Shown: one piece after another, positions 11,661 through 63,177 of the stretch
How the letters are laid out: every line of letters starts with the position of its first letter
Position numbering within the stretch: position 1 is the stretch's first letter
Virus record (IMG/VR): IMGVR_UViG_3300034117_002447
Coordinates: 1-64,000 of that record
DNA: 64,000 nt
Reading direction: 5' to 3' (one strand)
Notes under the pieces: model-generated
What the model saw: the letters and a program-made list of their open reading frames with translations, nothing else
What the model was told of the DNA's origin: nothing
Database searches by the model: none
Translations under genes and position numbers: made by a program

Positions 11661-14225
11661 GTGAAGCCCATTGCTTTTACCTATTACTCAAATGCAGTCT
11701 CCGATATTTTCTTAAAAAATGTGGAAACATTCCTCTACTATTCAGGAAAATACGACAGCCTAGTCATTTGCTCCGATATACCTTTGCCTAAAACCATAAT
11801 ATCGGCATTATGCGAAATTATTCAAGTGATTAAGATCTCCCCAAACGAGCAATCTATCTCGTTGAAGAAGAAATTTTCAAGTAATTCTAACCCAACTATA
11901 GTTAACCCTTTCATATTAACAGCACTTTCTTATTCAGAAGCATCGGATATTACTGTATTCGACCCCCATGTGTTTTTAATAAAGGATATAGACTTAACCA
12001 ATAATTCCAATCAATTTTTCTTTTCCCAGAACTCATTAATATCTACGAGCTTTTTTAAATTTAAGCCTTCTTCTGAGATTAGTCGGCTTGCTAATCAAAT
12101 TCTAATAAACCAGGATTATACTAACATATCAATAATCCAGGCCTTTAATTTCTTTATAACGAACTCACTAGCCTTTTCTGAAAAGTCGATACGGTCTGAT
12201 CTTTTTATCTTTACCAGACCTAGTGATGAAGTTGAATTAAAGGAAGATAAGATACTCGGCTTTGATTTTTTAAATTTAAGTAGGACTTCACATTTCAAGG
12301 AAATTTCCGGAATTAGAGATAATCATGTTGCCAAAAAGAAAAAGCAGCTACTTGCCTTTATCAAGAAAAAATACCAATACCTAGATCAGTCACTAGTTAC
12401 TGCTACTCAAAATAATGCAGCAGTTCCAATATCTTACGAAAACTTTAAAAAGTATTCAGACAAACTCACCAATACGGTACAGATCAATCTGATCTACACA
12501 AAACAGGTAGCTAATCACGCTAAGAATTTAGAAAAGACCCTAACCGAATTAGGGTTTATTGTAAAGTCTTCAATTAAATCTCCAGGTAGTGCTCTAAACC
12601 CAAATGACCCTAACTTGCATATCGTCATGTGCCCAAATGTATTCACGGATTTCCCAAAGAATTACATAGCCTACCAATTTGAACAAGCCCATTCAAGCTG
12701 GTTCACTAAAGATTACATACACAGGCTAAATTGTGCGATTGAAATATGGGATTATTCAGAATACAATATCAATTATTTCAAAGGAAAATTTGGAAGACCT
12801 CATATATTTGTACCAATCGGTCGAGTTGAACATGATGTTGATATAGTTAACCAAGCTAGAGATATAGATGTCCTGTTTTATGGAGAATACTCAGGCAGCA
12901 GTCGAAGAACTGAATTTCTAGATAGTATGAGAGAGCTTAGGTCCATCAAAGTAGTAGACGGATTTAGCGTACATAAGTTTGGATCAGATATCGTAGATAT
13001 TCTCAAGAGAACTAAAGTTGTACTAAATCACCACTACTACGATAATGGAAATCTTGAAGTAGTTAGAGTATATGAAGCCTTAAGCTACGGGTGTAAAGTC
13101 GTTTCCGAAGTTTCAGTTGATGATAATTACCACGATTTACCGATTTTAAGATATTCCAGTGTTACTGAAGCAGATCGGCTTCTAAAATTGGCACTAGCTG
13201 ATAATCAGGTTCGTGAATTTAACAAAAGTAATAAAGCTGTTATTAAATCAGCGATGAGTCGACTTGGTTTTAATATGCACAATCGAATTGCAGTATTTGC
13301 TCATTATGATGTCCTTAACCAGATCGACGATTATGTAGTTGACTATTTAACTAAACTTAGTAAATTTTGTGACAAAATAATATTTGTGTCTGACGGTAAC
13401 GTAAATCCTTCTGAGCTGGAAAAAATCTCTCATTTAATATCTGATAGTATATGTGGAAGGCACGGTGAATCAAACGATTTAGGTAGTTACAAGAGAGGTT
13501 TCAATTTAATAATTGAAAAGTACAAGTCTGACATTTCTAAAATTGATCAATTTCTTTTTGTTAATGATTCAGGTTATTGTGTGGGCGATCTAACTCCAGT
13601 CTTTGACACTATGACTGGTGCATCCGTTGATGCATGGGCACTATGTGATCATGCGCCCGACCCAAAACTAATAGAGGGCAAGTGCTATTTACAAAGTAAT
13701 TTTTTCTCAGTTAACCGAGCAGTATTTACGGCAAAACCGTTCTCTCAGTTTATGAACAGTATAACAGTTTCTCATAATAAATCAGAAATAGTTGACAAGT
13801 ATGAGCTAGGTTTATCTGAGATGTTAATTAAGAATGGTTATAGGACCGGTTGTTACATAAGCACAGTCAGTCTAGATGAGTACATTAGATCGAATGATAC
13901 TCAATTAACAACTGAGGTCCTTTCGCTACTTTCCGGAAATTATTCAGGCATAACTAGCGATATAATGTCAAGAATATTTCATTCAAAAATAGGAGGAGAC
14001 TATGTCTATTCTGATCATTTTTATACTCTACTAAAAATAGGATTTCCGTTAATTAAATGCTTAGCACTAGTTCCAAATCAGGAAACTGGCCCATATAATA
14101 AACTAATTGACTATTGGAAGCCGATCCTCATTTCTAAATTGGGATCAGCTCAAGTTAATCAAATGCTAACTCATATTTCTAGAATCGGTAAGACTCCGAA
14201 ATCACCTAACAAAAATATACGATAA
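11661..14225 (+). CDS. multidomain glycosyltransferase with C-terminal rhamnan synthesis F (RgpF)-like domain
   Basis: Middle DIDVLFYG...VVLNHHYY..GNLEVVRVYEALSYG (GT-B-like). C-terminal AVFAHYD...DDYVVDYL...NDLGSYKRG...FVNDS...LQSNFF (RgpF-like). Confidence 0.75.
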   Translation: MKPIAFTYYSNAVSDIFLKNVETFLYYSGKYDSLVICSDIPLPKTIISALCEIIQVIKISPNEQSISLKKKFSSNSNPTIVNPFILTALSYSEASDITVFDPHVFLIKDIDLTNNSNQFFFSQNSLISTSFFKFKPSSEISRLANQILINQDYTNISIIQAFNFFITNSLAFSEKSIRSDLFIFTRPSDEVELKEDKILGFDFLNLSRTSHFKEISGIRDNHVAKKKKQLLAFIKKKYQYLDQSLVTATQNNAAVPISYENFKKYSDKLTNTVQINLIYTKQVANHAKNLEKTLTELGFIVKSSIKSPGSALNPNDPNLHIVMCPNVFTDFPKNYIAYQFEQAHSSWFTKDYIHRLNCAIEIWDYSEYNINYFKGKFGRPHIFVPIGRVEHDVDIVNQARDIDVLFYGEYSGSSRRTEFLDSMRELRSIKVVDGFSVHKFGSDIVDILKRTKVVLNHHYYDNGNLEVVRVYEALSYGCKVVSEVSVDDNYHDLPILRYSSVTEADRLLKLALADNQVREFNKSNKAVIKSAMSRLGFNMHNRIAVFAHYDVLNQIDDYVVDYLTKLSKFCDKIIFVSDGNVNPSELEKISHLISDSICGRHGESNDLGSYKRGFNLIIEKYKSDISKIDQFLFVNDSGYCVGDLTPVFDTMTGASVDAWALCDHAPDPKLIEGKCYLQSNFFSVNRAVFTAKPFSQFMNSITVSHNKSEIVDKYELGLSEMLIKNGYRTGCYISTVSLDEYIRSNDTQLTTEVLSLLSGNYSGITSDIMSRIFHSKIGGDYVYSDHFYTLLKIGFPLIKCLALVPNQETGPYNKLIDYWKPILISKLGSAQVNQMLTHISRIGKTPKSPNKNIR

Positions 14226-46275: not shown

Positions 46276-48258
46276 TTACTTAAATGATAAGTTTTCTTCT
46301 TTGGCTTTATGAGTAATCACCAATTTATCACCATCTTTAATCTTTCCGTCGATAAAGGCCTCTGCTATAAGATCTTCTACGTGATTTTGAATAACTCTCT
46401 TTAGTGGACGAGCTCCAAATTTAGGGTCATAGCCATTTTCAATTAAGAATTCTTTTGCCTGTTTAGTCAACTCAACAGTGTATCCATTTTCCTTAACTCT
46501 AGCATACAGGTCTAAAAGTTCAATTTCAACGATCTTAGTAATATCTTCTTTCTTAAGAGTCTCGAAGATAATAATATCATCTAGTCGATTGATAAACTCT
46601 GGTGCAAACTGCTTACTAACAGCCTTCTTTAGAACGCTTGCTGCGATCTCTTTCTGCTTTTCAAATTGATCAACAGCTGACGAGAATCCAATACCTCCTC
46701 CAAAATCTTGCAATTCCTTAACTCCCAAATTAGAAGTCATAATAATCACAGTATTTTTAAAATCTATTTTACGACCAAGCCCATCAGTTAAATGGCCTTC
46801 ATCCAATACTTGAAGTAGAGTGTGAAAAATATCAGGATGAGCTTTTTCGACCTCGTCCAATAGAACTACTGAATAGGGTTTACGCTTAACTCTCTCAGTA
46901 AGCTGACCACCTTCATCGTATCCAACGTATCCTGGAGGAGCTCCTATTAATTTAGTCGACGTAAATTTTTCTCCAAACTCAGTCATGTCTATTCTGATTA
47001 ACGAGTCCTCTGAGTCGAACATGAATTTTGCAAGCTGCTTTGCCAATTCGGTTTTACCAACACCAGTTGGGCCGAGGAACATGAAAGTCCCAATTGGTCT
47101 ATTTTTAGACTTAAGCCCTGCTCTTGATCGCTGGATTGCTTTTGTTAATTTGACCACTGCTTCAGGCTGACCGATTACTCGATCCTTTAACCAGCTTGCC
47201 ATATTAGCAAGTCTTTCAAGCTCAGAACCTTTGAGTCTAGTAATTGGAATTCCAGTAATTGCGGCAACTACTGATGCGATATCTTCTTCTGAAACATTTA
47301 GGCGATTCACCTTTAATGATTCTTCCCATTTTGATTTTTCTTCGTCAATTTCTGACATTACCTTAAGTGCTTCGTCTCTCAATTTAGCAGCCGCTTCGTA
47401 CTGTTGTCCATCTACTGCCTTTTGTTTGCGTTCGCTTACCTCAACTAATTTTACCTCAAGTGACTTAATTTCTTCAGGTACAACTACTCCGTTTATGTGA
47501 ACTGCTGAGCCAGCTTCGTCCATTAAGTCAATCGCTTTATCCGGTAGAAATCTGTCCTGTAAGTATCGATCACTGTAGGTAACGCAAGCATCAAGTGCTT
47601 CGTCAGTGTATCTTACTGAGTGATGGTCTTCGTACTTCTGGCGTATATTCTGGATGATCTGGCGAGCTTGTTCTGGCGTAGATGGATCTACCATCACTTG
47701 CTGAAATCTACGATTCAGGGCACCATCTTTTTCAATAGATCCTCTAAATTCGTCAAGCGTTGTTGCACCAATACACTGAATCTGTCCACGAGAAAGTGCA
47801 GGTTTCAGGATATTCGCCGCATCCAATGATCCGCTAGCTGAGCCAGCTCCAATTAGGGTATGAATCTCATCTATGAATAGGATAACATGCGGATTTTGTT
47901 GAACTTCGTCAATTATTTGTTCCATTCGCTCTTCGAATTGACCTCTGTACTTTGTACCTGCTACTAAATTCGCAAGCTCAAGAGTAACGATCTTTTTATC
48001 GAATAGAACTCGTGGACAAGTTTTGTCAATGATCATTTTTGCAAGACCTTCGACGATGGCAGTTTTACCAACTCCAGGCTCTCCAATCAAGAGAGGATTG
48101 TTCTTTTTTCTACGTGCGAGTATTTGACTGCAACGCTTTATTTCTTTTTCCCTACCAACGACTGGATCTAACTTTCCCTCAATAGCTAATTGAGTAAGAT
48201 CTTTCCCGAACGAATCGAGCATTGGAGTTTTTCCGGTTTTGTTGTTTTGTTTTGCCAT
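46276..48258 (-). CDS. clpC: ClpC-like AAA+ ATPase lacking the N-terminal domain
   Basis: GEPGVGKT, GTKYRGQFEERM, IDEIH, UVR-type M-domain (QQYEAAAKLRD), GPTGVGKT, LDEVEKAH and GARPL motifs. Confidence 0.9.
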   Translation of the reverse strand: MAKQNNKTGKTPMLDSFGKDLTQLAIEGKLDPVVGREKEIKRCSQILARRKKNNPLLIGEPGVGKTAIVEGLAKMIIDKTCPRVLFDKKIVTLELANLVAGTKYRGQFEERMEQIIDEVQQNPHVILFIDEIHTLIGAGSASGSLDAANILKPALSRGQIQCIGATTLDEFRGSIEKDGALNRRFQQVMVDPSTPEQARQIIQNIRQKYEDHHSVRYTDEALDACVTYSDRYLQDRFLPDKAIDLMDEAGSAVHINGVVVPEEIKSLEVKLVEVSERKQKAVDGQQYEAAAKLRDEALKVMSEIDEEKSKWEESLKVNRLNVSEEDIASVVAAITGIPITRLKGSELERLANMASWLKDRVIGQPEAVVKLTKAIQRSRAGLKSKNRPIGTFMFLGPTGVGKTELAKQLAKFMFDSEDSLIRIDMTEFGEKFTSTKLIGAPPGYVGYDEGGQLTERVKRKPYSVVLLDEVEKAHPDIFHTLLQVLDEGHLTDGLGRKIDFKNTVIIMTSNLGVKELQDFGGGIGFSSAVDQFEKQKEIAASVLKKAVSKQFAPEFINRLDDIIIFETLKKEDITKIVEIELLDLYARVKENGYTVELTKQAKEFLIENGYDPKFGARPLKRVIQNHVEDLIAEAFIDGKIKDGDKLVITHKAKEENLSFK

Positions 48259-53541: not shown

Positions 53542-54348
53542 TTACTCAGTTATGGAGGTTCCGCAATTAGGGCAGAATTTCCAACTTGATTTTTTGTGGC
53601 GAGTACCGCAACCTGTGCAATAAGAGCGAATTTCTCCCATTTCAACAGGTTTTTTACTTTCCGGTAGAATCTGCCACCTGACGGTTGTACAGCTCCATGA
53701 ATTGTATTGGCCGTCTGCATATTCGAAGTTTTGACTAGAGCTTTCGCCCTTTTCAATTCGACCCGTTTCCATCGACCCCGGTATTCCGGCTGGACCTTGA
53801 GGGCCGTTTGAACCTTGTGGACCTAGCGAACTTGCGCAGTAAAATGCATTAGCTGAACCTCCAATATTAGAAGTTAGCGTATGACCTGGCCACTGGTGAG
53901 TCGTGTACGTAAATGGCTGTTGCCAAATATTCGTACCTGAATTGCCGTTTAGCTGATAAGACGATTCATCATAGAACTGTACTTCGACCTTGCCGTTATC
54001 GGCGATTGCTCGAACAGTTCCAGTTGACGTATCAACGTCGTAAGTTTCAAACTTGAATTTTTTAGCAACATCCATAAATCTTTCAAGATAGACTCTCTGG
54101 CCTGGTTTCACGATAATTCCTGCATTCGATAACAGTTTCCCATTTATCCAGATTTTTGCAAGAACTGGTGTTGTTTTTGGATTGTGCAGTTCAATTTCAA
54201 AATGTGAACTGTCTTTTAGATAGACTGACTGACCGTAGGTCTTTAGTCTTCCCCTGCCCTTTGTTATGTGGGCAGTAGGTTGGGGTTGGCTGCTGAAAGT
54301 ATTAAATACTGCAGTTGAACCACCAGTTGTGATTGTTTGTTGGTACAT
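53542..54348 (-). CDS. hypothetical protein with beta-rich N-domain, short Gly-X-Y stretch and C-terminal zinc ribbon
   Basis: FEIELHNP...LAKIWING...V.PGQRVYLERF; GPQGSNGPQGPAG; CTGCG...FCPNCG. Confidence 0.85.
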   Translation of the reverse strand: MYQQTITTGGSTAVFNTFSSQPQPTAHITKGRGRLKTYGQSVYLKDSSHFEIELHNPKTTPVLAKIWINGKLLSNAGIIVKPGQRVYLERFMDVAKKFKFETYDVDTSTGTVRAIADNGKVEVQFYDESSYQLNGNSGTNIWQQPFTYTTHQWPGHTLTSNIGGSANAFYCASSLGPQGSNGPQGPAGIPGSMETGRIEKGESSSQNFEYADGQYNSWSCTTVRWQILPESKKPVEMGEIRSYCTGCGTRHKKSSWKFCPNCGTSITE

Positions 54349-54363
54349 AGTAGTTATGTTATT

Positions 54364-54447
54364 TTTTGCTCATCTATTTGTAACCTTTCGCGATTACTCA
54401 AGGGCTCGTAAACCCTAGACGAACAGAGCGAGGCTCTATGTTCCAGT
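54364..54447 (-). other. structured 5' leader with upstream inverted-repeat arm (54426-54447) and two hairpins
   Basis: Minus strand: ACTGGAACATAGAGCCTCGCTC, then AGGGTT-TACG-AGCCCT and GTAATC-GCGAAA-GGTTAC. Confidence 0.65.
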
Positions 54448-55423: not shown

Positions 55424-55678
55424 CTACTTCCCTACGTATTCTGAAGGCAGATCTGCAGGTTTAAATACTCTACAGAAACCAAAATGGACCCATCGATTAA
55501 GGAAATCTACTGAGTATTCCTGCTTGTCGGTAGTGACCATTCCATTAATTGGATCGCTTGAGCCCTTAATTATAGTTTCATTAGGTTTGTCCTTTCTAGA
55601 AAAGACTATGATATTACCCTTTTTTAAATTTGCCATGTTGATTAAGTTAAGTACCCCAGGAGGGATTCGAACCCCCAT
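55424..55678 (-). CDS. hypothetical protein; true start likely ATG (MANLKKG) at 55636
   Basis: The ORF-track 5' end overlaps tRNA-Arg(ACG). Confidence 0.55.
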   Translation of the reverse strand: MGVRIPPGVLNLINMANLKKGNIIVFSRKDKPNETIIKGSSDPINGMVTTDKQEYSVDFLNRWVHFGFCRVFKPADLPSEYVGK

Positions 55679-55724
55679 CTCACGGTCCGTAGCCGTGTGT
55701 TCTGATCCATTGAACTACCGGGGC
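55652..55724 (-). tRNA. trnR-ACG: tRNA-Arg(ACG)
   Basis: GCCCCGG/CTGGGGT acceptor; CACGG-CT-ACG-GA-CCGTG anticodon arm; TTCGAAT T-loop; no encoded CCA. Confidence 0.93.
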
Positions 55725-55733
55725 AGGTACTAA

Positions 55734-55964
55734 TTAGTTTCGGTTATGTGCAGCTTTCCAGCGCTCTTGCAGACCTTCCCAGTAGCCACTTTCGTTTTGA
55801 AAACGTTGAACCACTTGAACATCTTCGGGAAAACCTAGTGCAAGCTTAGCCTGATTACGAATATCAGCCTTCATAATTGTCTGAATCAAGGCTGTGTGAA
55901 ACGATCCAGCTGTTCCAATCTTATAGAACATGAATTCTCTTTCTGCGTTTGTTATTTCTTCCAT
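55734..55964 (-). CDS. small conserved phage protein within the tRNA array
   Basis: GSFHTALI.....AD..N..KL..GFPE pattern; TAGTACAATA upstream. Confidence 0.7.
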   Translation of the reverse strand: MEEITNAEREFMFYKIGTAGSFHTALIQTIMKADIRNQAKLALGFPEDVQVVQRFQNESGYWEGLQERWKAAHNRN

Positions 55965-55988
55965 AGCTATATTGTACTAAATAATTTG

Positions 55989-56062
55989 TAATCCAGGCAG
56001 GACTCGAACCTGCGACCTACCGCTTAGAAGGCGGTTGCTCTATTCCACTGAGCTACTGGACT
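55989..56062 (-). tRNA. trnR-TCT: tRNA-Arg(TCT)
   Basis: AGTCCAG/CTGGATT acceptor; ACCGC-CT-TCT-AA-GCGGT. Confidence 0.93.
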
Positions 56063-56063
56063 A

Positions 56064-56151
56064 TGGCGGAGAGTGGAGGTCTCGATCCCCATTCCCTTTC
56101 GGGAACCGCTCGCTTAGCAGGCGGCGACAACACCTTGTTGCTTCACTCTCC
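56064..56151 (-). tRNA. trnS-GCT: tRNA-Ser(GCT), non-canonical (8/4) fold
   Basis: GGAGAGTG/CACTCTCC 8-bp acceptor, 5-bp D stem, CT-GCT-AA loop, long variable arm, 4-bp T stem with ATCGAGA loop, G73, CCA encoded. Confidence 0.85.
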
Positions 56152-56156
56152 ATTAG

Positions 56157-56237
56157 TACTCCCGGTGGGACTCGAACCCACAAGCATTGCGCACTCGATC
56201 TTAAGCCGAGCGTGTTTACCAGTTTCACCACGGGAGC
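56157..56237 (-). tRNA. trnL-TAA: tRNA-Leu(TAA)
   Basis: GCTCCCG/CGGGAGT acceptor; CTCGG-CT-TAA-GA-TCGAG; variable arm; A73. Confidence 0.93.
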
Positions 56238-56244
56238 ATTTTTG

Positions 56245-56320
56245 TACCTCTGGTGGGATTCGAACCCACAAAATCTCTTGATCCTAAGTCAAGCGGCTTT
56301 ACCAGTTTACCCACAGAGGC
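56245..56320 (-). tRNA. trnL-TAG: tRNA-Leu(TAG) with very short variable region
   Basis: GCCTCTG/CAGAGGT acceptor; CTTGA-CT-TAG-GA-TCAAG; variable region only AGATTTT. Confidence 0.88.
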
Positions 56321-56323
56321 AGT

Positions 56324-56401
56324 TGGGGTAAACGATCGGGATCGAACCGACGACCTCCTGAACCACAATCAGGCGCTCTAACCAACTGAGCTACGTCTAC
56401 C
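56324..56401 (-). tRNA. trnH-GTG: tRNA-His(GTG)
   Basis: G-1 and C73; CCTGA-TT-GTG-GT-TCAGG; CCA encoded. Confidence 0.95.
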
Positions 56402-56416
56402 ATGTAAAAGAACGAG

Positions 56417-56500
56417 CGGAAGAGTGAGGTATCGATCCCCATACCCGAAGGTACCACTAGTTTTCAAGACTAGGTCCAGCGCCAGCTGAATTACTCTTCC
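56417..56500 (-). tRNA. trnS-TGA: tRNA-Ser(TGA), likely (8/4) fold
   Basis: GGAAGAGT/ACTCTTCC; CTAGT-CT-TGA-AA-ACTAG; GTACC-TTCG-GGTAT variable arm; GGGG-ATCGATA-CCTC T arm; G73. Confidence 0.9.
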
Positions 56501-56508
56501 AGTTTTTG

Positions 56509-56578
56509 AGGTCAATGTTGGAATCGAACCAACTCCTCAGATTTTGCAGACCTGACGGCCTCCACGACCAAACTGACC
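56509..56578 (-). tRNA. trnC-GCA: tRNA-Cys(GCA)
   Basis: GGTCAGT/ATTGACC acceptor; CAGGT-CT-GCA-AA-ATCTG; U73; compact D arm. Confidence 0.92.
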
Positions 56579-56580
56579 AA

Positions 56581-56616
56581 AAACAAAAAAGGCTTAAACG
56601 TTAGTCTAAGCCTTTT
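56581..56616 (-). terminator. attenuator-type intrinsic terminator immediately upstream of the tRNA array
   Basis: AAAAGGCTTAGAC-TAAC-GTTTAAGCCTTTTTTGTTT on the minus strand, ending a few nt before tRNA-Cys. Confidence 0.9.
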
Positions 56617-56640
56617 CAGTAGAAGTTTTCTTATCTTACA

Positions 56641-56712
56641 TCACGGCCTAGACACATCGAGACTTAATCTCAACGAACGTAAACAAAGTGAATGTAAGGA
56701 TAATGTTTTCAT
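56641..56712 (-). CDS. leader peptide MKTLSLHSLCLRSLRLSLDVSRP (putative tRNA-operon attenuator peptide)
   Basis: ATG...TGA, 23 aa; codons 4-18 are all Leu/Ser/His/Cys/Arg; the 3' end GTCTAGGCC is complementary to the terminator 5' arm GGCTTAGAC. Confidence 0.8.
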   Translation of the reverse strand: MKTLSLHSLCLRSLRLSLDVSRP

Positions 56713-56749: not shown

Positions 56750-58081
56750 TTATTCTTTTCTTTTTGCTAATTTTCTTTTAACTGCTTCCCGAGTCGACTC
56801 CATTTTCTTGGCATAACTTGGATTTTTTCGCTTGTTAAAATTAATTTGTTGATTTAGCGATCCAGTAATCTTTTGCATGTTACCACCTCTTGTTCTGATT
56901 AACCAATCCGCTAATTTATTAACTCCAAGGTCTCTGAATTTTCCATTTGCATCAGGTGCATCAGAATCGTGCCATTTAAGTTTTTTCTTTTCTGAAATTT
57001 CATCTTCATCAGCTTCATCATCTTCTTCGTCATCCCATCTGTGATACTGTTCCTCAATTGCCTTATTTAAAAGATCTTGAATTTTGTCGTACATTCCAAG
57101 CGAGTCTTCGAAACCAGTTACGGCACTCATAAAGAGTTCAATATCTTCAGCTATCTCATTAGACTTCATTGAAACTGGATCTCCATTTTGGAATAGGTCA
57201 GACCATTCATAGTCTTCAAGTTCAGCATCTTCGTAAAGTCCGATATCTTTTTGTGCGACACTAACTGACGACTTAACAGTTTCATCGATAAAGTTTATTC
57301 TGACTTCAAAATCAGTCCATACGTCTCTTTCTATATCCGGATATTCGGATGAATCTATTCCGTAATCATCTATAGATTGATTGAACTGGCCTGAAACAAT
57401 AACGATTTGATCTTCTGCAGTTGCTCCATTGACTAGTTCTGCGATTGCATCAGTGTCAACTCCACCAAAACCCATTGCTCTTAGTTCTGCAGCTTCTTCA
57501 TCAGATAAGTTCTCAATTATGAATTTTCCTTTTGTGTTAGGCTCATCAGAATCATGCCATTTAAGTTTCTTCTTTTCTGATACTTCTCCAAGACGTCTAT
57601 CGATTATGTCATTTACTATATCGACTGCCATGTCTACAAACATGCCTTCGTATTCAATTCGCTGCAAAATCTGAGTTAACTCATCAGCGATTCCTTGAGA
57701 ATCGTGATTTTCTGAATCCAGTTTAAAATCAACTTCATACGCATTACCTGCACCGTCAAAATCAATCCCAGAATTTAAGACTGCCACTTGTACTTTAGAT
57801 TTCATTGTCTCAAAGTCGAAATCAACATAGTACTGAACAAGGAACACGCTATCTAATTCAGCAGCCTCTGCTCTTTCTGGATCAAGTCCTAAATCATCAG
57901 CTGTCATATCAAATCCCAAATCGAAACCTAATGTCGTGTCGGTCTTCTCCTCTGGGTTGTATTCGGCCATTAATCCTTGAATTTCATCCGTGTCAATCTT
58001 TGAATTAAAACCTAATGCTGCTAATTCTTCAGCATCATCAGTATTTTCATTAACGAATTGTGTAAATCGTTTAAGTCTCAT
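56750..58081 (-). CDS. very acidic modular protein, capsid-targeting-like N-terminus
   Basis: LKRFTQFVNE; two acidic domains each preceded by ELxA(L/M)GF and each followed by SEKKKLKWHDSD. Confidence 0.75.
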   Translation of the reverse strand: MRLKRFTQFVNENTDDAEELAALGFNSKIDTDEIQGLMAEYNPEEKTDTTLGFDLGFDMTADDLGLDPERAEAAELDSVFLVQYYVDFDFETMKSKVQVAVLNSGIDFDGAGNAYEVDFKLDSENHDSQGIADELTQILQRIEYEGMFVDMAVDIVNDIIDRRLGEVSEKKKLKWHDSDEPNTKGKFIIENLSDEEAAELRAMGFGGVDTDAIAELVNGATAEDQIVIVSGQFNQSIDDYGIDSSEYPDIERDVWTDFEVRINFIDETVKSSVSVAQKDIGLYEDAELEDYEWSDLFQNGDPVSMKSNEIAEDIELFMSAVTGFEDSLGMYDKIQDLLNKAIEEQYHRWDDEEDDEADEDEISEKKKLKWHDSDAPDANGKFRDLGVNKLADWLIRTRGGNMQKITGSLNQQINFNKRKNPSYAKKMESTREAVKRKLAKRKE

Positions 58082-62188: not shown

Positions 62189-62309
62189 TAGTCAGGACAG
62201 GATTCGAACCTGCATGGTCACATCTCTTACCTTTGTTTTCCCCGCTAAGGGAGTGGTGAACGAAGCGAGTTCCGCACCACATAGCGTCTACCAATTCCGC
62301 CACCTGACT
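62189..62309 (-). ncRNA. 121-nt tRNA-like RNA with Leu-type acceptor/D/T arms and a 70-nt insert in place of the anticodon and variable arms
   Basis: AGTCAGG/CCTGACT-A acceptor; GCG-GAATTGGTAGA-CGC D arm; GCAGG-TTCGAAT-CCTGT T arm; no canonical anticodon arm. Confidence 0.75.
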
Positions 62310-62634: not shown

Positions 62635-63177
62635 TTAGAATGGGCTGATTAACTCTTTAAACGGGGTTCCCAATTGATCTTTATCCGAAATGATAGGATT
62701 TTCAATTTCCCAATCAATCGCTAAGTCCGCATCATTCCATAATATACAGCCTTCATGTTCTTTTGAATAACCGTTTGTGCATTTATAGGAAAAAATAGTG
62801 TCGTCTTCTAGGCTAACGAAGCCATGCGCAAAGCCTGGTGGAATCCAAAGTTGATTGCGATCAGTCGTATTTAATACAACTTGAAAGGATTTACCGTAGC
62901 TTGGAGAGTCTCGACGAATATCTACCGCAACATCCAACACGCTTCCTGTAATTACCTGAACCAATTTTCCTTGATCAAACGGTGGAGCTTGAAAATGCAA
63001 TCCACGAAGGACTCCTTTTTTGGATCTAGATAAATTATCCTGAACAAATGAATGCTCATTAAGAAATTCAGAATATTTCAGCTGATTAAACGATTCTAGA
63101 AAAAATCCTCTTTCATCGCCAAACACGGATGGATAAACTGATATAAGCCCGTTAGGAAATTCTTGTACAACTTTCAT
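62635..63177 (-). CDS. rmlC: dTDP-4-dehydrorhamnose 3,5-epimerase
   Basis: FGDERGFF, VQDNLS.S..GVLRGLHFQ, DVAVDIR, WIPPGFAHGF and YKCT motifs. Confidence 0.95.
   Translation of the reverse strand: MKVVQEFPNGLISVYPSVFGDERGFFLESFNQLKYSEFLNEHSFVQDNLSRSKKGVLRGLHFQAPPFDQGKLVQVITGSVLDVAVDIRRDSPSYGKSFQVVLNTTDRNQLWIPPGFAHGFVSLEDDTIFSYKCTNGYSKEHEGCILWNDADLAIDWEIENPIISDKDQLGTPFKELISPF

What the first reader, a model, noticed from the sequence alone, without database searches (positions are those of the whole stretch)
56064..56500. Both tRNA-Ser genes fold as non-canonical (8/4) cloverleaves with an A54 T-loop
Ser(GCT): GGAGAGTG/CACTCTCC 8-bp acceptor, AA linker, 5-bp D stem GCAAC/GTTGT, 6-bp variable stem abutting a 4-bp T stem GGGG/CCTC, loop ATCGAGA. 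A 7/5 fold would need a U-C mismatch. Ser(TGA) has the same architecture (GGAAGAGT/ACTCTTCC, TTCAG/CTGGA, GGGG-ATCGATA-CCTC) (seen). Canonical tRNAs are 7/5 with TTCRAAT; 8/4 tRNAs are a rare described class that includes some phage tRNA-Ser (established, from memory). Ser(GCT) also has two mismatches at the top of the anticodon stem. Inference: altered shape may evade host tRNA nucleases or modifications while remaining SerRS substrates.
Basis: partly seen in the sequence, partly recalled or inferred. Interest (0 to 1): 0.62.

Follow-up and report, generated by a model that had tools for sequence, protein, structure and literature searches.

The report
Phage 8/4-type serine tRNA genes
Two serine tRNA genes in a 271-kb lake-water phage have an 8-pair acceptor stem and a 4-pair T stem instead of the usual 7 and 5; this shape was already described for phage serine tRNAs in 2017, and standard tRNA finders miss it.

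Summary
Window 56067-56151 (-) is tRNA-Ser(GCU) and 56417-56500 (-) is tRNA-Ser(UGA). Both have an 8-bp acceptor stem, an AA linker, a long D stem with a short loop, a long variable arm, G73, and a 4-bp T stem GGGG/CCUC with loop AUCGANA (A54, A60).

In 63 related phage genes chosen without using pair 8, the eighth acceptor pair is formed in 62 and covaries (UA, AU, GC, CG). The pair that a 7/5 fold would need fails in 22 and never covaries.

These genes belong to a published class, the (8/4) tRNA-Ser / allo-tRNA of Mukai et al. 2017, which was reported in bacteriophages. So this is a new member, not a new kind.

What this work adds:
- The same T arm recurs in many uncultured phages and in cultured Cellulophaga, Stenotrophomonas, Xanthomonas and Phaeobacter phages, where the four genes I inspected are unannotated.
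- Default ARAGORN and Rfam miss most of them.
- Many large phage tRNA clusters show no other Ser tRNA, so the 8/4 genes most likely act as ordinary Ser isoacceptors.
- A54 is common but not required.
- The phage also has a canonical tRNA-Ser(UGA) outside the window.

The parts
56064..56151 (-). (8/4) tRNA-Ser(GCU) gene. Nt 1 is 56151, discriminator G73 is 56067, and the encoded CCA is 56066-56064. Acceptor 5' strand 56151-56144 and 3' strand 56075-56068. Anticodon GCU 56118-56116. T stem 56090-56087 with 56079-56076. T loop AUCGAGA 56086-56080.
   Evidence: Sequence. MFE fold is 8/4. ARAGORN -ps80 calls tRNA-Ser(gct) with an 8-bp acceptor and 4-bp T stem. Family model R1 scores it 67.3 bits. 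Family covariation.
56417..56500 (-). (8/4) tRNA-Ser(UGA) gene. Nt 1 is 56500 and discriminator G73 is 56417; no CCA is encoded. Anticodon UGA 56466-56464. 6-bp D stem with UGGC loop. T loop AUCGAUA 56436-56430.
   Evidence: Sequence. MFE fold is 8/4. Rfam tRNA-Sec 47.9 bits. ARAGORN -ps80 calls tRNA-Ser(tga). R1 scores it 89.9 bits. It is 92-95% identical to genes in huge phages LR745206 and LR756502. A metatranscriptome contig from a related strain covers 56338-56678.
55651..56578 (-). The surrounding tRNA cluster, all canonical 7/5: Arg(ACG) 55651-55724, Arg(UCU) 55988-56062, Leu(UAA) 56156-56237, Leu(UAG) 56244-56320, His(GUG) 56324-56400 (G-1 at 56401, C73), Cys(GCA) 56508-56578. A 76-aa ORF lies at 55734-55964.
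   Evidence: ARAGORN. Rfam tRNA 37-70 bits. The ORF matches phrog_15317, function unknown.
56586..56617 (-). Terminator-like hairpin followed by a T run, just upstream of the cluster on the minus strand. It probably ends the gene at 56750-58081.
   Evidence: Consensus scan only; 1 site found against 1.2 expected in shuffles, so the evidence is weak.

Best explanation
These are two working serine tRNA genes of the already described (8/4) tRNA-Ser / (8/4) allo-tRNA class. They are carried by a T4-like jumbo phage of lake water whose host is probably a Bacteroidota bacterium.

The acceptor stem has gained one pair and the T stem has lost one. The coaxial acceptor/T helix therefore still has 12 pairs, the length that EF-Tu and the ribosome expect.

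The long variable arm, G73 and the G1-C72 / G2-C71 / A3-U70 acceptor start are the usual SerRS recognition features. The phage encodes no SerRS, so the host enzyme should charge them. Ser(UGA) needs CCA added after transcription, and the phage has a CCA-adding-type enzyme. Ser(GCU) encodes its CCA.

In translation, Ser(UGA) reads the phage's commonest Ser codon, UCA (and probably UCU/UCG by wobble, which is inferred). Ser(GCU) is the only phage tRNA for AGU/AGC.

Shown here: the fold, family membership, covariation, the absence of a phage SerRS, and the codon usage. Inferred: charging by the host SerRS, use on the ribosome, and the reason for the shape. I take the shape to be mainly an inherited trait of a tRNA lineage that circulates among phages.
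For: Fold:
- MFE and ARAGORN -ps80 both give 8/4.
- On 63 relatives the eighth acceptor pair is formed in 62 with four pair types. The competing 7/5 pair fails in 22 of 63 and never covaries.
- All six D-stem pairs covary.

Class:
- Mukai et al. 2017 describe (8/4) tRNA-Ser in bacteriophages with a tRNA-Sec-like D arm.
- They showed that 8/4 and 9/3 allo-tRNAs are folded, processed, serylated and delivered by EF-Tu in E. coli (PMC5389517).

Ser identity:
- Every true family member found has a Ser anticodon: UGA 40, GGA 14, CGA 12, GCU 9.
- Nearly all have G73.

Decoding role:
- In several tRNA clusters with 21-31 tRNAs, no other Ser tRNA was detected in the stretch held.
- This phage has tRNAs for all 20 amino acids, and only the 8/4 gene serves AGY.
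- Phage Ser codon use per thousand: UCA 32, UCU 23, AGU 12, AGC 10, UCC 5, UCG 6.

Enzymes:
- No class-II synthetase core (PF00587) is found in the phage.
- A CCA-adding-type enzyme lies at G000 65763-66179.

Host and expression:
- The nearest portal relatives are huge phages, Lak phages of Prevotella, and Tenacibaculum and Chryseobacterium phages.
- A 598-nt metatranscriptome contig from a roughly 97% identical strain covers Ser(UGA) and tRNA-Cys, while the flanking genes have no RNA contigs in that run.
Against: - There is no direct evidence of a mature tRNA, of charging or of use in translation for these two genes.
- The RNA-library contig could derive from DNA. No substantial RNA contig covers Ser(GCU).
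- The Ser(GCU) anticodon stem has only three good pairs plus C.A and G.G, which might impair function, although the same arm is conserved in other phages.
- The phage keeps a canonical and an 8/4 tRNA-Ser(UGA) with the same anticodon loop. This redundancy is not explained by simple decoding.
- The very strong conservation of the T arm GGGG/AUCGANA/CCUC across distant phages hints at a constraint that the 'inherited lineage' view does not explain.
- The host is inferred only from distant protein similarity.
Confidence: 0.75

Rival explanations
1. Counter-defence by shape. The 8/4 geometry, the tRNA-Sec-like D arm and the A54/A60 T loop make these tRNAs poor substrates for a host or rival factor that recognises the elbow, T arm or acceptor end of canonical tRNA-Ser, such as a tRNA-directed abortive-infection toxin or a modification enzyme. 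They would still be charged by SerRS, so Ser decoding survives infection. This would add to the decoding role rather than replace it.
For: - The shape clearly differs from the canonical 7/5, U54 tRNA-Ser found in 151 sampled Bacteroidota genomes. The best R1 score there is 46 bits, against 67-90 bits for the phage genes.
- The phage keeps a canonical and an 8/4 Ser(UGA) together.
- In the capped motif scans, 74 tRNA genes came from about 120 viral stretches, against 3 genuine ones from 120 bacterial stretches.
- A54 cannot be methylated to m5U54 (chemistry).
- From memory, not checked here: phage tRNAs that rescue translation from tRNA-cleaving defences are known, and AbiE/MenT-type nucleotidyltransferase toxins prefer tRNA-Ser.
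Against: - Nothing here tests it.
- The anticodon loops are identical to canonical ones, so anticodon nucleases would not be evaded through the loop sequence.
- In many phages no other Ser tRNA was detected in the cluster, which simple decoding explains.
- 8/4 tRNA-Ser genes with ordinary U54 loops sit in the same clusters.
- Hosts of carrier phages span several phyla, which argues against one specific host factor.
Confidence: 0.15
2. They are canonical 7/5 tRNAs with a weak or mismatched 49:65 pair and a 3-nt linker, and the 8/4 drawing is an artefact of pairing by eye.
For: Ser(UGA) alone can form a 7/5 fold with a U:A pair at 49:65 (sequence). Across the family, 41 of 63 members allow this.
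Against: - The 49:65' pair is impossible in 22 of 63 members and shows no covariation, whereas 8:65' pairs in 62 of 63 with four pair types.
- Ser(GCU) would need a U.C pair.
- A 7/5 fold costs 2-3 kcal/mol.
- It would leave a 3-nt linker and would break the closing pair of the variable stem.
Confidence: 0.03
3. They are not used in translation. They could be decaying pseudogenes or tRNA-like RNAs with a regulatory or decoy role, as was suggested for some inactive allo-tRNAs next to toxin-antitoxin genes.
For: - Ser(GCU) has a weak anticodon stem.
- Some allo-tRNA(UAU) variants were inactive in E. coli (PMC5389517).
- Standard tools do not recognise the genes.
Against: - Compensatory changes in the acceptor, D and anticodon stems across dozens of phages show selection on the whole cloverleaf.
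- The anticodons are restricted to the Ser boxes.
- G73 and often CCA are kept.
- The genes sit inside tRNA operons and fill the Ser slot.
- The mismatched GCU arm is itself conserved.
Confidence: 0.05
4. They are selenocysteine tRNAs or recoding (missense or nonsense suppressor) allo-tRNAs.
For: Rfam's best hit for Ser(UGA) is the tRNA-Sec model, just above its cut-off. Both share an 8-bp acceptor and a 6-bp D stem.
Against: - The anticodons are UGA (reads UCA) and GCU (reads AGY), which are both Ser codon boxes. Neither is UCA.
- The acceptor/T helix has 12 pairs, not the 13 of bacterial tRNA-Sec.
- Inserting Ser at Ser codons is not recoding.
Confidence: 0.01

Closest known systems
(8/4) tRNA-Ser / (8/4) allo-tRNA (Mukai et al., Nucleic Acids Res 2017, PMC5389517)
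   Same: Both have an 8-bp acceptor plus 4-bp T stem (12 pairs), a long D stem with a tetraloop like tRNA-Sec, pyrimidine 20, a long variable arm, G73 and Ser anticodons. [quoted passage not shown]
   Different: Nothing essential differs. The published phage examples came from a marine macroalgal-surface metagenome and alpha-proteobacterial phages, often alongside an (8/4) tRNA-His. Here the carrier is a freshwater T4-like jumbo phage related to Bacteroidota-infecting huge phages, and its tRNA-His is canonical. The paper's main text does not mention the A54/A60 T loop. Its figures and supplements were not readable here, so I cannot tell whether the consensus shows it.
Bacterial selenocysteine tRNA (Rfam RF01852)
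   Same: Both have an 8-bp acceptor stem, a 6-bp D stem with a 4-nt loop, a long variable arm, and serylation by SerRS. This is why Rfam scores Ser(UGA) as tRNA-Sec.
   Different: Bacterial tRNA-Sec is 8/5 (13 pairs), has anticodon UCA and needs SelA/SelB. These genes are 8/4 (12 pairs) with Ser anticodons.
Canonical bacterial class II tRNA-Ser (7/5)
   Same: Both have a long variable arm, G73, the GGA... acceptor start and the anticodon loop CUUGAAA or CUGCUAA. The presumed charging enzyme and decoding role are the same.
   Different: The canonical type has a 7-bp acceptor, U8, a 3-4-bp D stem with a large loop, a 5-bp T stem and a UUCGA T loop. This is what the phage's own third tRNA-Ser and the Bacteroidota genomes show.
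Eukaryotic initiator tRNA-Met T loop (A54, A60)
   Same: The T loop reads A54-U55-C56-G57-A58-N59-A60. [quoted passage not shown]
   Different: This is a resemblance of the loop only. The phage genes are bacterial-type elongator Ser tRNAs with a 4-bp T stem, and nothing suggests an initiation role.

Membership tests
(8/4) tRNA-Ser / (8/4) allo-tRNA (Mukai 2017) | 8-bp acceptor stem plus 4-bp T stem, giving a 12-bp acceptor branch | tested here: met
   MFE folds and ARAGORN -ps80. Pair 8:65' is formed in 62 of 63 relatives with UA/AU/GC/CG, while the 7/5 alternative fails in 22 of 63.
(8/4) tRNA-Ser / (8/4) allo-tRNA (Mukai 2017) | tRNA-Sec-like D arm (long stem, tetraloop with G18 G19, pyrimidine at 20) | tested here: met
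   Ser(UGA) has UUCAGC-UGGC-GCUGGA. All six D-stem pairs covary in the family. Ser(GCU) has a D arm one nt shorter, read as 5 bp with loop AAGGU or 6 bp with loop AGG.
(8/4) tRNA-Ser / (8/4) allo-tRNA (Mukai 2017) | Serine identity set: long variable arm and G73 (or U73) | tested here: met
   Variable arms have 5-6-bp stems with tetraloops, and G73 is present in both genes. G73 is present in nearly all relatives.
(8/4) tRNA-Ser / (8/4) allo-tRNA (Mukai 2017) | Serine anticodon (this separates (8/4) tRNA-Ser from recoding allo-tRNAs) | tested here: met
   The anticodons are UGA and GCU. The family has only UGA, GGA, CGA and GCU.
(8/4) tRNA-Ser / (8/4) allo-tRNA (Mukai 2017) | Serylation by SerRS and use by EF-Tu and the ribosome | not testable with these tools
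   This was shown for other 8/4 and 9/3 allo-tRNAs in E. coli (PMC5389517) but not for these genes. The phage has no SerRS core domain.
Selenocysteine tRNA (RF01852) | Anticodon UCA reading UGA | tested here: not met
   The anticodon loop CUUGAAA gives anticodon UGA, which reads UCA (alignment).
Selenocysteine tRNA (RF01852) | 13-bp acceptor branch (8/5 in bacteria) | tested here: not met
   The T stem has 4 pairs, giving 12 in all.
Canonical 7/5 tRNA (RF00005) | 7-bp acceptor, 2-nt linker starting with U8, 5-bp T stem, T54 | tested here: not met
   Rfam gives no RF00005 match for Ser(GCU) even at E<=10 on the gene alone, and Ser(UGA) is won by tRNA-Sec. Default ARAGORN misses both. The 49:65' pair is not conserved. 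The linker is AA and position 54 is A.
(8/4) tRNA-His (Mukai 2017), reported to co-occur with (8/4) tRNA-Ser in some phages | 8/4 tRNA-His lacking G-1, with A73 or U73 | tested here: not met
   The tRNA-His at 56324-56400 is 7/5 with an encoded G-1 (56401) opposite C73, followed by CCA.

The most novel reading that the evidence does not exclude
The 8/4 geometry together with the near-invariant GGGG/AUCGANA/CCUC T arm (A54, A60) could mark a phage-borne, structurally orthogonal serine tRNA lineage. Its shape would be selected because it escapes a widespread host factor that recognises the elbow or acceptor end of canonical tRNA-Ser, such as a tRNA-Ser-directed abortive-infection toxin or a T-loop modification or quality-control enzyme. 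That would explain why this phage keeps a canonical and an 8/4 tRNA-Ser(UGA) side by side.
Probability: 0.15. Interest if true: 0.7.

Novelty: new member of a known kind. Interest (0 to 1): 0.35.

Why it matters
There are three reasons, none of them large.

1. Annotation. Default ARAGORN called only 12 of 70 such genes in 45 viral loci. Rfam's tRNA model does not see Ser(GCU) at all. The four cultured-phage records whose 8/4 genes I inspected leave them unannotated. Phage tRNA inventories and codon-supply analyses therefore undercount Ser tRNAs in a systematic way. This phage would look as if it lacked an AGY-Ser tRNA.

2. Distribution. The published class now extends to a freshwater T4-like jumbo phage related to the huge Bacteroidota phages. 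It also extends to cultured phages of four bacterial genera, which makes the biology testable at the bench.

3. An open question. The recurrent A54/A60 T arm, and the coexistence of canonical and 8/4 isoacceptors with the same anticodon, raise the question of why phages maintain this shape. 8/4 and 9/3 scaffolds are also used in genetic-code-expansion work, so natural variants have some practical value.

Tried and rejected
- tRNA-Sec: rejected, because the anticodons are Ser and the acceptor branch has 12 pairs.
- 7/5 fold: rejected by covariation.
- 6-bp anticodon stem with a bulged A for Ser(GCU): considered from the sequence. The family shows a 5-bp stem with unpaired 26 and 44, and recurrent mismatches at the top of the stem, so I did not adopt it.
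- Phage-encoded SerRS as a dedicated partner: no PF00587 match in the 271-kb genome.
- Host origin of the shape: 151 sampled Bacteroidota genomes gave only canonical tRNA-Ser, with a best score of 46 bits. A motif scan of bacterial genomes gave 3 genuine 8/4 tRNAs among 120 listed matches: one Elusimicrobiales MAG contig and two rumen Clostridiales MAGs.
- A54 as an obligatory partner of 8/4: rejected, because about 20 co-resident 8/4 tRNA-Ser genes have U54 loops. The sample was selected by the A54 motif, so the true proportion is unknown.
- Independent relatives L041 and L052: they are 100% identical to the window. They are the same phage and were not counted as support.
- Expression: only Logan contigs were available. 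One 598-nt RNA-library contig covers Ser(UGA), and none covers Ser(GCU). Most other short pieces were generic tRNA fragments from other organisms. This is weak evidence.
- Promoter scan: no convincing sigma-70-type promoter for the cluster, and Bacteroidota promoters are not modelled.
- Neighbouring ORFs gave no informative Pfam or PHROG hits.
- Mukai et al.'s supplements are not held, so their sequences could not be compared.
Full report
WHAT IS THERE

The window is the first 64 kb of a 271,290-bp IMG/VR virus record. On the minus strand between 55651 and 56578 lies a cluster of tRNA genes. ARAGORN at default settings finds Arg(ACG), Arg(UCU), Leu(UAA), Leu(UAG), His and Cys. It leaves two gaps, at about 56064-56155 and 56401-56507.

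Ser(GCU), 56067-56151, has these parts, and CCA follows in the DNA:
- Acceptor GGAGAGUG/CACUCUCC (8 pairs) and linker AA.
- D arm GCAAC-AAGGU-GUUGU.
- Anticodon loop CUGCUAA.
- Variable stem GUUCCC/GGGAAU with a GAAA loop.
- T stem GGGG/CCUC with loop AUCGAGA, then G73.

Ser(UGA), 56417-56500, has these parts, and no CCA is encoded:
- Acceptor GGAAGAGU/ACUCUUCC and linker AA.
- A 6-pair D stem UUCAGC/GCUGGA with loop UGGC.
- Anticodon loop CUUGAAA.
- A 5-pair variable stem with a UUCG loop.
- T arm GGGG-AUCGAUA-CCUC, then G73.

IS THE 8/4 FOLD REAL?

Unconstrained folding gives the 8/4 cloverleaf for both genes, with z-scores of -3.1 and -2.8 against shuffles. Forcing 7/5 costs 2-3 kcal/mol. 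ARAGORN at a lowered threshold calls both tRNA-Ser and draws an 8-pair acceptor and a 4-pair T stem. Rfam places Ser(UGA) with tRNA-Sec at 47.9 bits, against a cut-off of 47. Rfam does not match Ser(GCU) to any tRNA model even when given the gene alone at E<=10.

Taken alone, Ser(UGA) could also form a 7/5 fold, because the U before GGGG could pair with the A after CCUC. Comparative data were therefore needed.

Most of them are full tRNA-Ser-like genes. To avoid circularity I kept sequences that have the motif and seven perfect outer acceptor pairs. I then asked what happens at the eighth position. The 63 distinct sequences were aligned as A1.
- Pair 8:65' is UA 41, AU 11, GC 9, CG 1, and unpaired 1.
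- The pair that a 7/5 fold needs (49:65') is UA 41 and unpaired 22, with no second pair type.
- All six D-stem pairs covary, with 95% of cells paired.

The 8/4 fold, with a tRNA-Sec-like D arm, is therefore well supported for the family, and so for these two members.

WHAT IT IS

This is a published class. Mukai et al. 2017 (PMC5389517) describe tRNAs with 8/4 and 9/3 acceptor branches. [quoted passage not shown] They note that the D stem-loop resembles that of tRNA-Sec. They also showed that 8/4 and 9/3 allo-tRNAs are folded, processed, aminoacylated and delivered by EF-Tu in E. coli. A 2020 review repeats this (PMC7609411). The two window genes meet every sequence-level criterion of that class (see the membership test).

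They are not tRNA-Sec, because the anticodons are UGA and GCU and the branch has 12 pairs rather than 13. They are not recoding allo-tRNAs, because the anticodons are Ser. The tRNA-His next to them is canonical (G-1, C73). This differs from the (8/4) tRNA-His that Mukai et al. found beside (8/4) tRNA-Ser in alpha-proteobacterial phages.

CONTEXT

The phage has a T4-type portal. Its nearest relatives at 34-42% protein identity are the 460-735-kb 'huge phages' and the Lak phages of Prevotella. Tenacibaculum and Chryseobacterium phages come next. The host is therefore probably a Bacteroidota bacterium, which is an inference. At least 21 lake or freshwater metagenome runs from 2016-2024 hold the stretch almost completely.

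Across the whole genome ARAGORN finds 26 tRNAs and a tmRNA. With the two 8/4 genes, all 20 amino acids are covered. There is also a third, canonical 7/5 tRNA-Ser(UGA) at G000 82016-82103, with a UUCGAAU loop and an encoded CCA. A family covariance model (R1) finds only the two window genes in the genome, at 89.9 and 67.3 bits. It scores the canonical Ser at 28 bits.

The phage has no class-II synthetase core domain, so a host SerRS must charge these tRNAs. It has a CCA-adding-type nucleotidyltransferase at 65763-66179, which fits the missing CCA of Ser(UGA). Phage Ser codons are dominated by UCA (32 per thousand) and UCU (23), followed by AGU (12) and AGC (10). This matches a supply of two UGA tRNAs and one GCU tRNA.

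DISTRIBUTION AND WHAT IS NEW HERE

1. Huge phages. Ser(UGA) is 92-95% identical to genes in LR745206 and LR756502, although their portals share only about 34% identity with this phage's portal. The differences include a compensatory C-G to A-U change in the D stem.

2. Cultured phages. BLAST found the family in four cultured phages, and in each GenBank record no gene is annotated at that place:
- Cellulophaga phi10:1, Ser(UGA), loop AUCGUGA.
- Stenotrophomonas DLP_6, Ser(GGA).
- Xanthomonas BUDD, Ser(CGA). Phage X1 gave an equivalent BLAST match but was not inspected.
- Phaeobacter MD18, Ser(GGA).

3. Detection. In 45 viral loci with 70 such genes, default ARAGORN calls only 12.

4. Ser slot. 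In several clusters with 21-31 tRNAs, no other Ser tRNA was detected in the stretch held. One cluster (L043) carries four 8/4 genes covering GGA, UGA, CGA and GCU. This is the strongest indirect argument that they serve as the phage's ordinary Ser isoacceptors. 'Canonical' here means a gene called by ARAGORN that does not overlap a strict 8/4 hit, so the split is approximate.

5. Hosts. In 151 sampled Bacteroidota genomes the best R1 hits score 38-46 bits. The top hits inspected are canonical 7/5 tRNA-Ser(UGA) with UUCGA loops. The 8/4 type was not found in those searched. A capped motif scan of bacterial genomes gave only three genuine 8/4 tRNAs among 120 matches: one Elusimicrobiales MAG contig and two rumen Clostridiales MAGs with anticodon AGA.

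6. A54. A structure-only scan that ignores the T-arm sequence found about 20 further 8/4 tRNA-Ser genes in the same loci with ordinary U54 loops such as UUCGAUU and UUCAAUU. The neighbours of the Ser(UGA) homologues in the huge phages are among them. So A54 is frequent but is not a necessary companion of 8/4. My sample was selected by the A54 motif, so I give no proportion. An Acinetobacter T4-like phage has a 7/5 tRNA-Ser(UGA) with loop AUCGUUC. This suggests that A54 is also not confined to 8/4 tRNAs.

7. Ser(GCU) anticodon stem. The two non-pairs at the top of the stem are not decay. The same arm (GCCGC / CUGCUAA / GCGAG) occurs in Acinetobacter T4-like phages, and a C.A at the same place recurs in other GCU members. 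In the family, pair 27:43 is unpaired in 27 of 63 members and pair 28:42 in 10 of 63.

THE T LOOP

The loop A54-U55-C56-G57-A58-N59-A60 has the two 'signature' T-loop adenines of eukaryotic initiator tRNA. There, A54, A60 and m1A58 together with A20 rigidify the loop and its link to the D loop (PMC3950347). A similar stiffening of an elbow built on a 4-pair T stem and a 4-nt D loop is a reasonable structural guess, but it is only a guess. A54 cannot carry m5U54, which follows from chemistry. The main text of Mukai et al. does not mention A54, and their figures and supplements were not available.

EXPRESSION

Only assembled contigs were available.
- In one lake metatranscriptome (X24), a 598-nt contig about 97% identical to the window covers 56338-56678. 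That span holds the end of tRNA-His, Ser(UGA), tRNA-Cys and the upstream spacer. The flanking protein genes have no contigs in that run.
- A second run (X23) has contigs over tRNA-Cys, over tRNA-Arg(ACG) plus the small ORF, and over a gene at 53978-54413.
- No substantial RNA contig covers Ser(GCU).

This fits transcription of the cluster in a related strain but does not prove it, and it says nothing about maturation or charging.

HOW IT MOST LIKELY WORKS

- Shown: two 8/4 Ser-type cloverleaves under selection, placed in a tRNA operon of a phage that lacks its own SerRS.
- From published work on the class: such tRNAs are serylated and used by a bacterial translation system.
- Inferred: the host SerRS charges them through the variable arm, G73 and the acceptor start. 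EF-Tu accepts the 12-pair helix. They then decode UCN and AGY codons during infection.
- On the shape: I think it is mainly inherited within a tRNA lineage that moves among phages. The coexistence of a canonical and an 8/4 Ser(UGA), and the very conserved T arm, speak for it. The identical anticodon loops, the carrier phages in which no other Ser tRNA was detected, and the range of host phyla speak against a single target.

VERDICT

The structural interpretation is right, and the class is already known, so this is a new member of a known kind. The functional inference is untested. Interest is modest. Its value lies mainly in annotation and in pointing to cultured phage-host pairs where the biology of 8/4 tRNAs can be tested.

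Noticed in passing
window 62189-62309 (-) and G000 117560-117650 (-): Two tRNA-like elements share the same acceptor stem (AGUCAGG/CCUGACU) and T arm (CAGG-UUCGAAU-CCUG). In place of a normal anticodon arm they carry long, different insertions (121 nt and 91 nt overall). The first has a Leu-like D arm. Rfam tRNA scores are 34.5 and 30.9 bits. ARAGORN's intron calls (Ala, Thr) are not convincing.
   Followed up: partly
G000 82016-82103 (-), 76446-79404 (-), 186300-186666 (+), 65763-66179 (-): Outside the window the phage has a canonical 7/5 tRNA-Ser(UGA), a second cluster of 18 tRNAs, a tmRNA gene (tag ending ...EELLAA), and a CCA-adding-type nucleotidyltransferase.
   Followed up: partly
L243 (Cellulophaga phage phi10:1, KC821618), L244 (Stenotrophomonas phage DLP_6, KU682439), L245 (Xanthomonas phage BUDD, ON758385), L247 (Phaeobacter phage MD18, MT270409): Four cultured phages carry 8/4 tRNA-Ser genes of the same family that are not annotated in their GenBank records. 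These are candidates for re-annotation and for bench tests.
   Followed up: partly
L246 (Acinetobacter phage Maestro, MT949699) 423-517 and 602-690: Its tRNA-Ser(GCU) shares the 5' half and the mismatched anticodon arm with the window's Ser(GCU), but it ends in UGG-UUCGAUU-CCA. It can be drawn as 9/3, or as 7/4 with a U.U. Its tRNA-Ser(UGA) is 7/5 but has an A54 loop (AUCGUUC).
   Followed up: no
L107 and L115 (IMG/VR contigs): A 7/5 tRNA-Met(CAU) has A1:U72 and T loop AUCGAAA, the hallmarks of a eukaryotic initiator tRNA. It may come from a virus of eukaryotes.
   Followed up: no
L009 (IMG/VR contig), minus strand, oriented positions 474-554: A tRNA-Cys(GCA) with U73 fits an 8/4 descriptor (T arm GGAG-UUCGAAU-CUCC). 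It may be a selC*-like or 8/4 tRNA-Cys in a phage.
   Followed up: no
L164 and L167 (rumen Oscillospiraceae / Clostridiales MAGs): 8/4 tRNAs with the same T arm carry anticodon AGA (A34). One of them has C33 instead of U33. This matches Mukai's mention of rumen Clostridia.
   Followed up: no
window 55734-55964 (-): A 76-aa ORF sits inside the tRNA cluster, between tRNA-Arg(ACG) and tRNA-Arg(UCU). It matches phrog_15317, whose function is unknown. RNA-library contigs of a related strain cover it.
   Followed up: partly
window 62635-63177 (-) and 11661-14225 (+): The phage carries sugar-pathway genes: a dTDP-4-dehydrorhamnose 3,5-epimerase (phrog_8784, E 5e-63) and an 854-aa protein with an RgpF rhamnan-synthesis domain. 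A ClpB-like double AAA+ ATPase lies at 46276-48258.
   Followed up: no
window 56491 (run X24): In a related strain seen in an RNA library, the second linker A of Ser(UGA) (nt 10) is C. That contig also has two further substitutions and a 1-nt deletion in the spacers flanking the gene.
   Followed up: no
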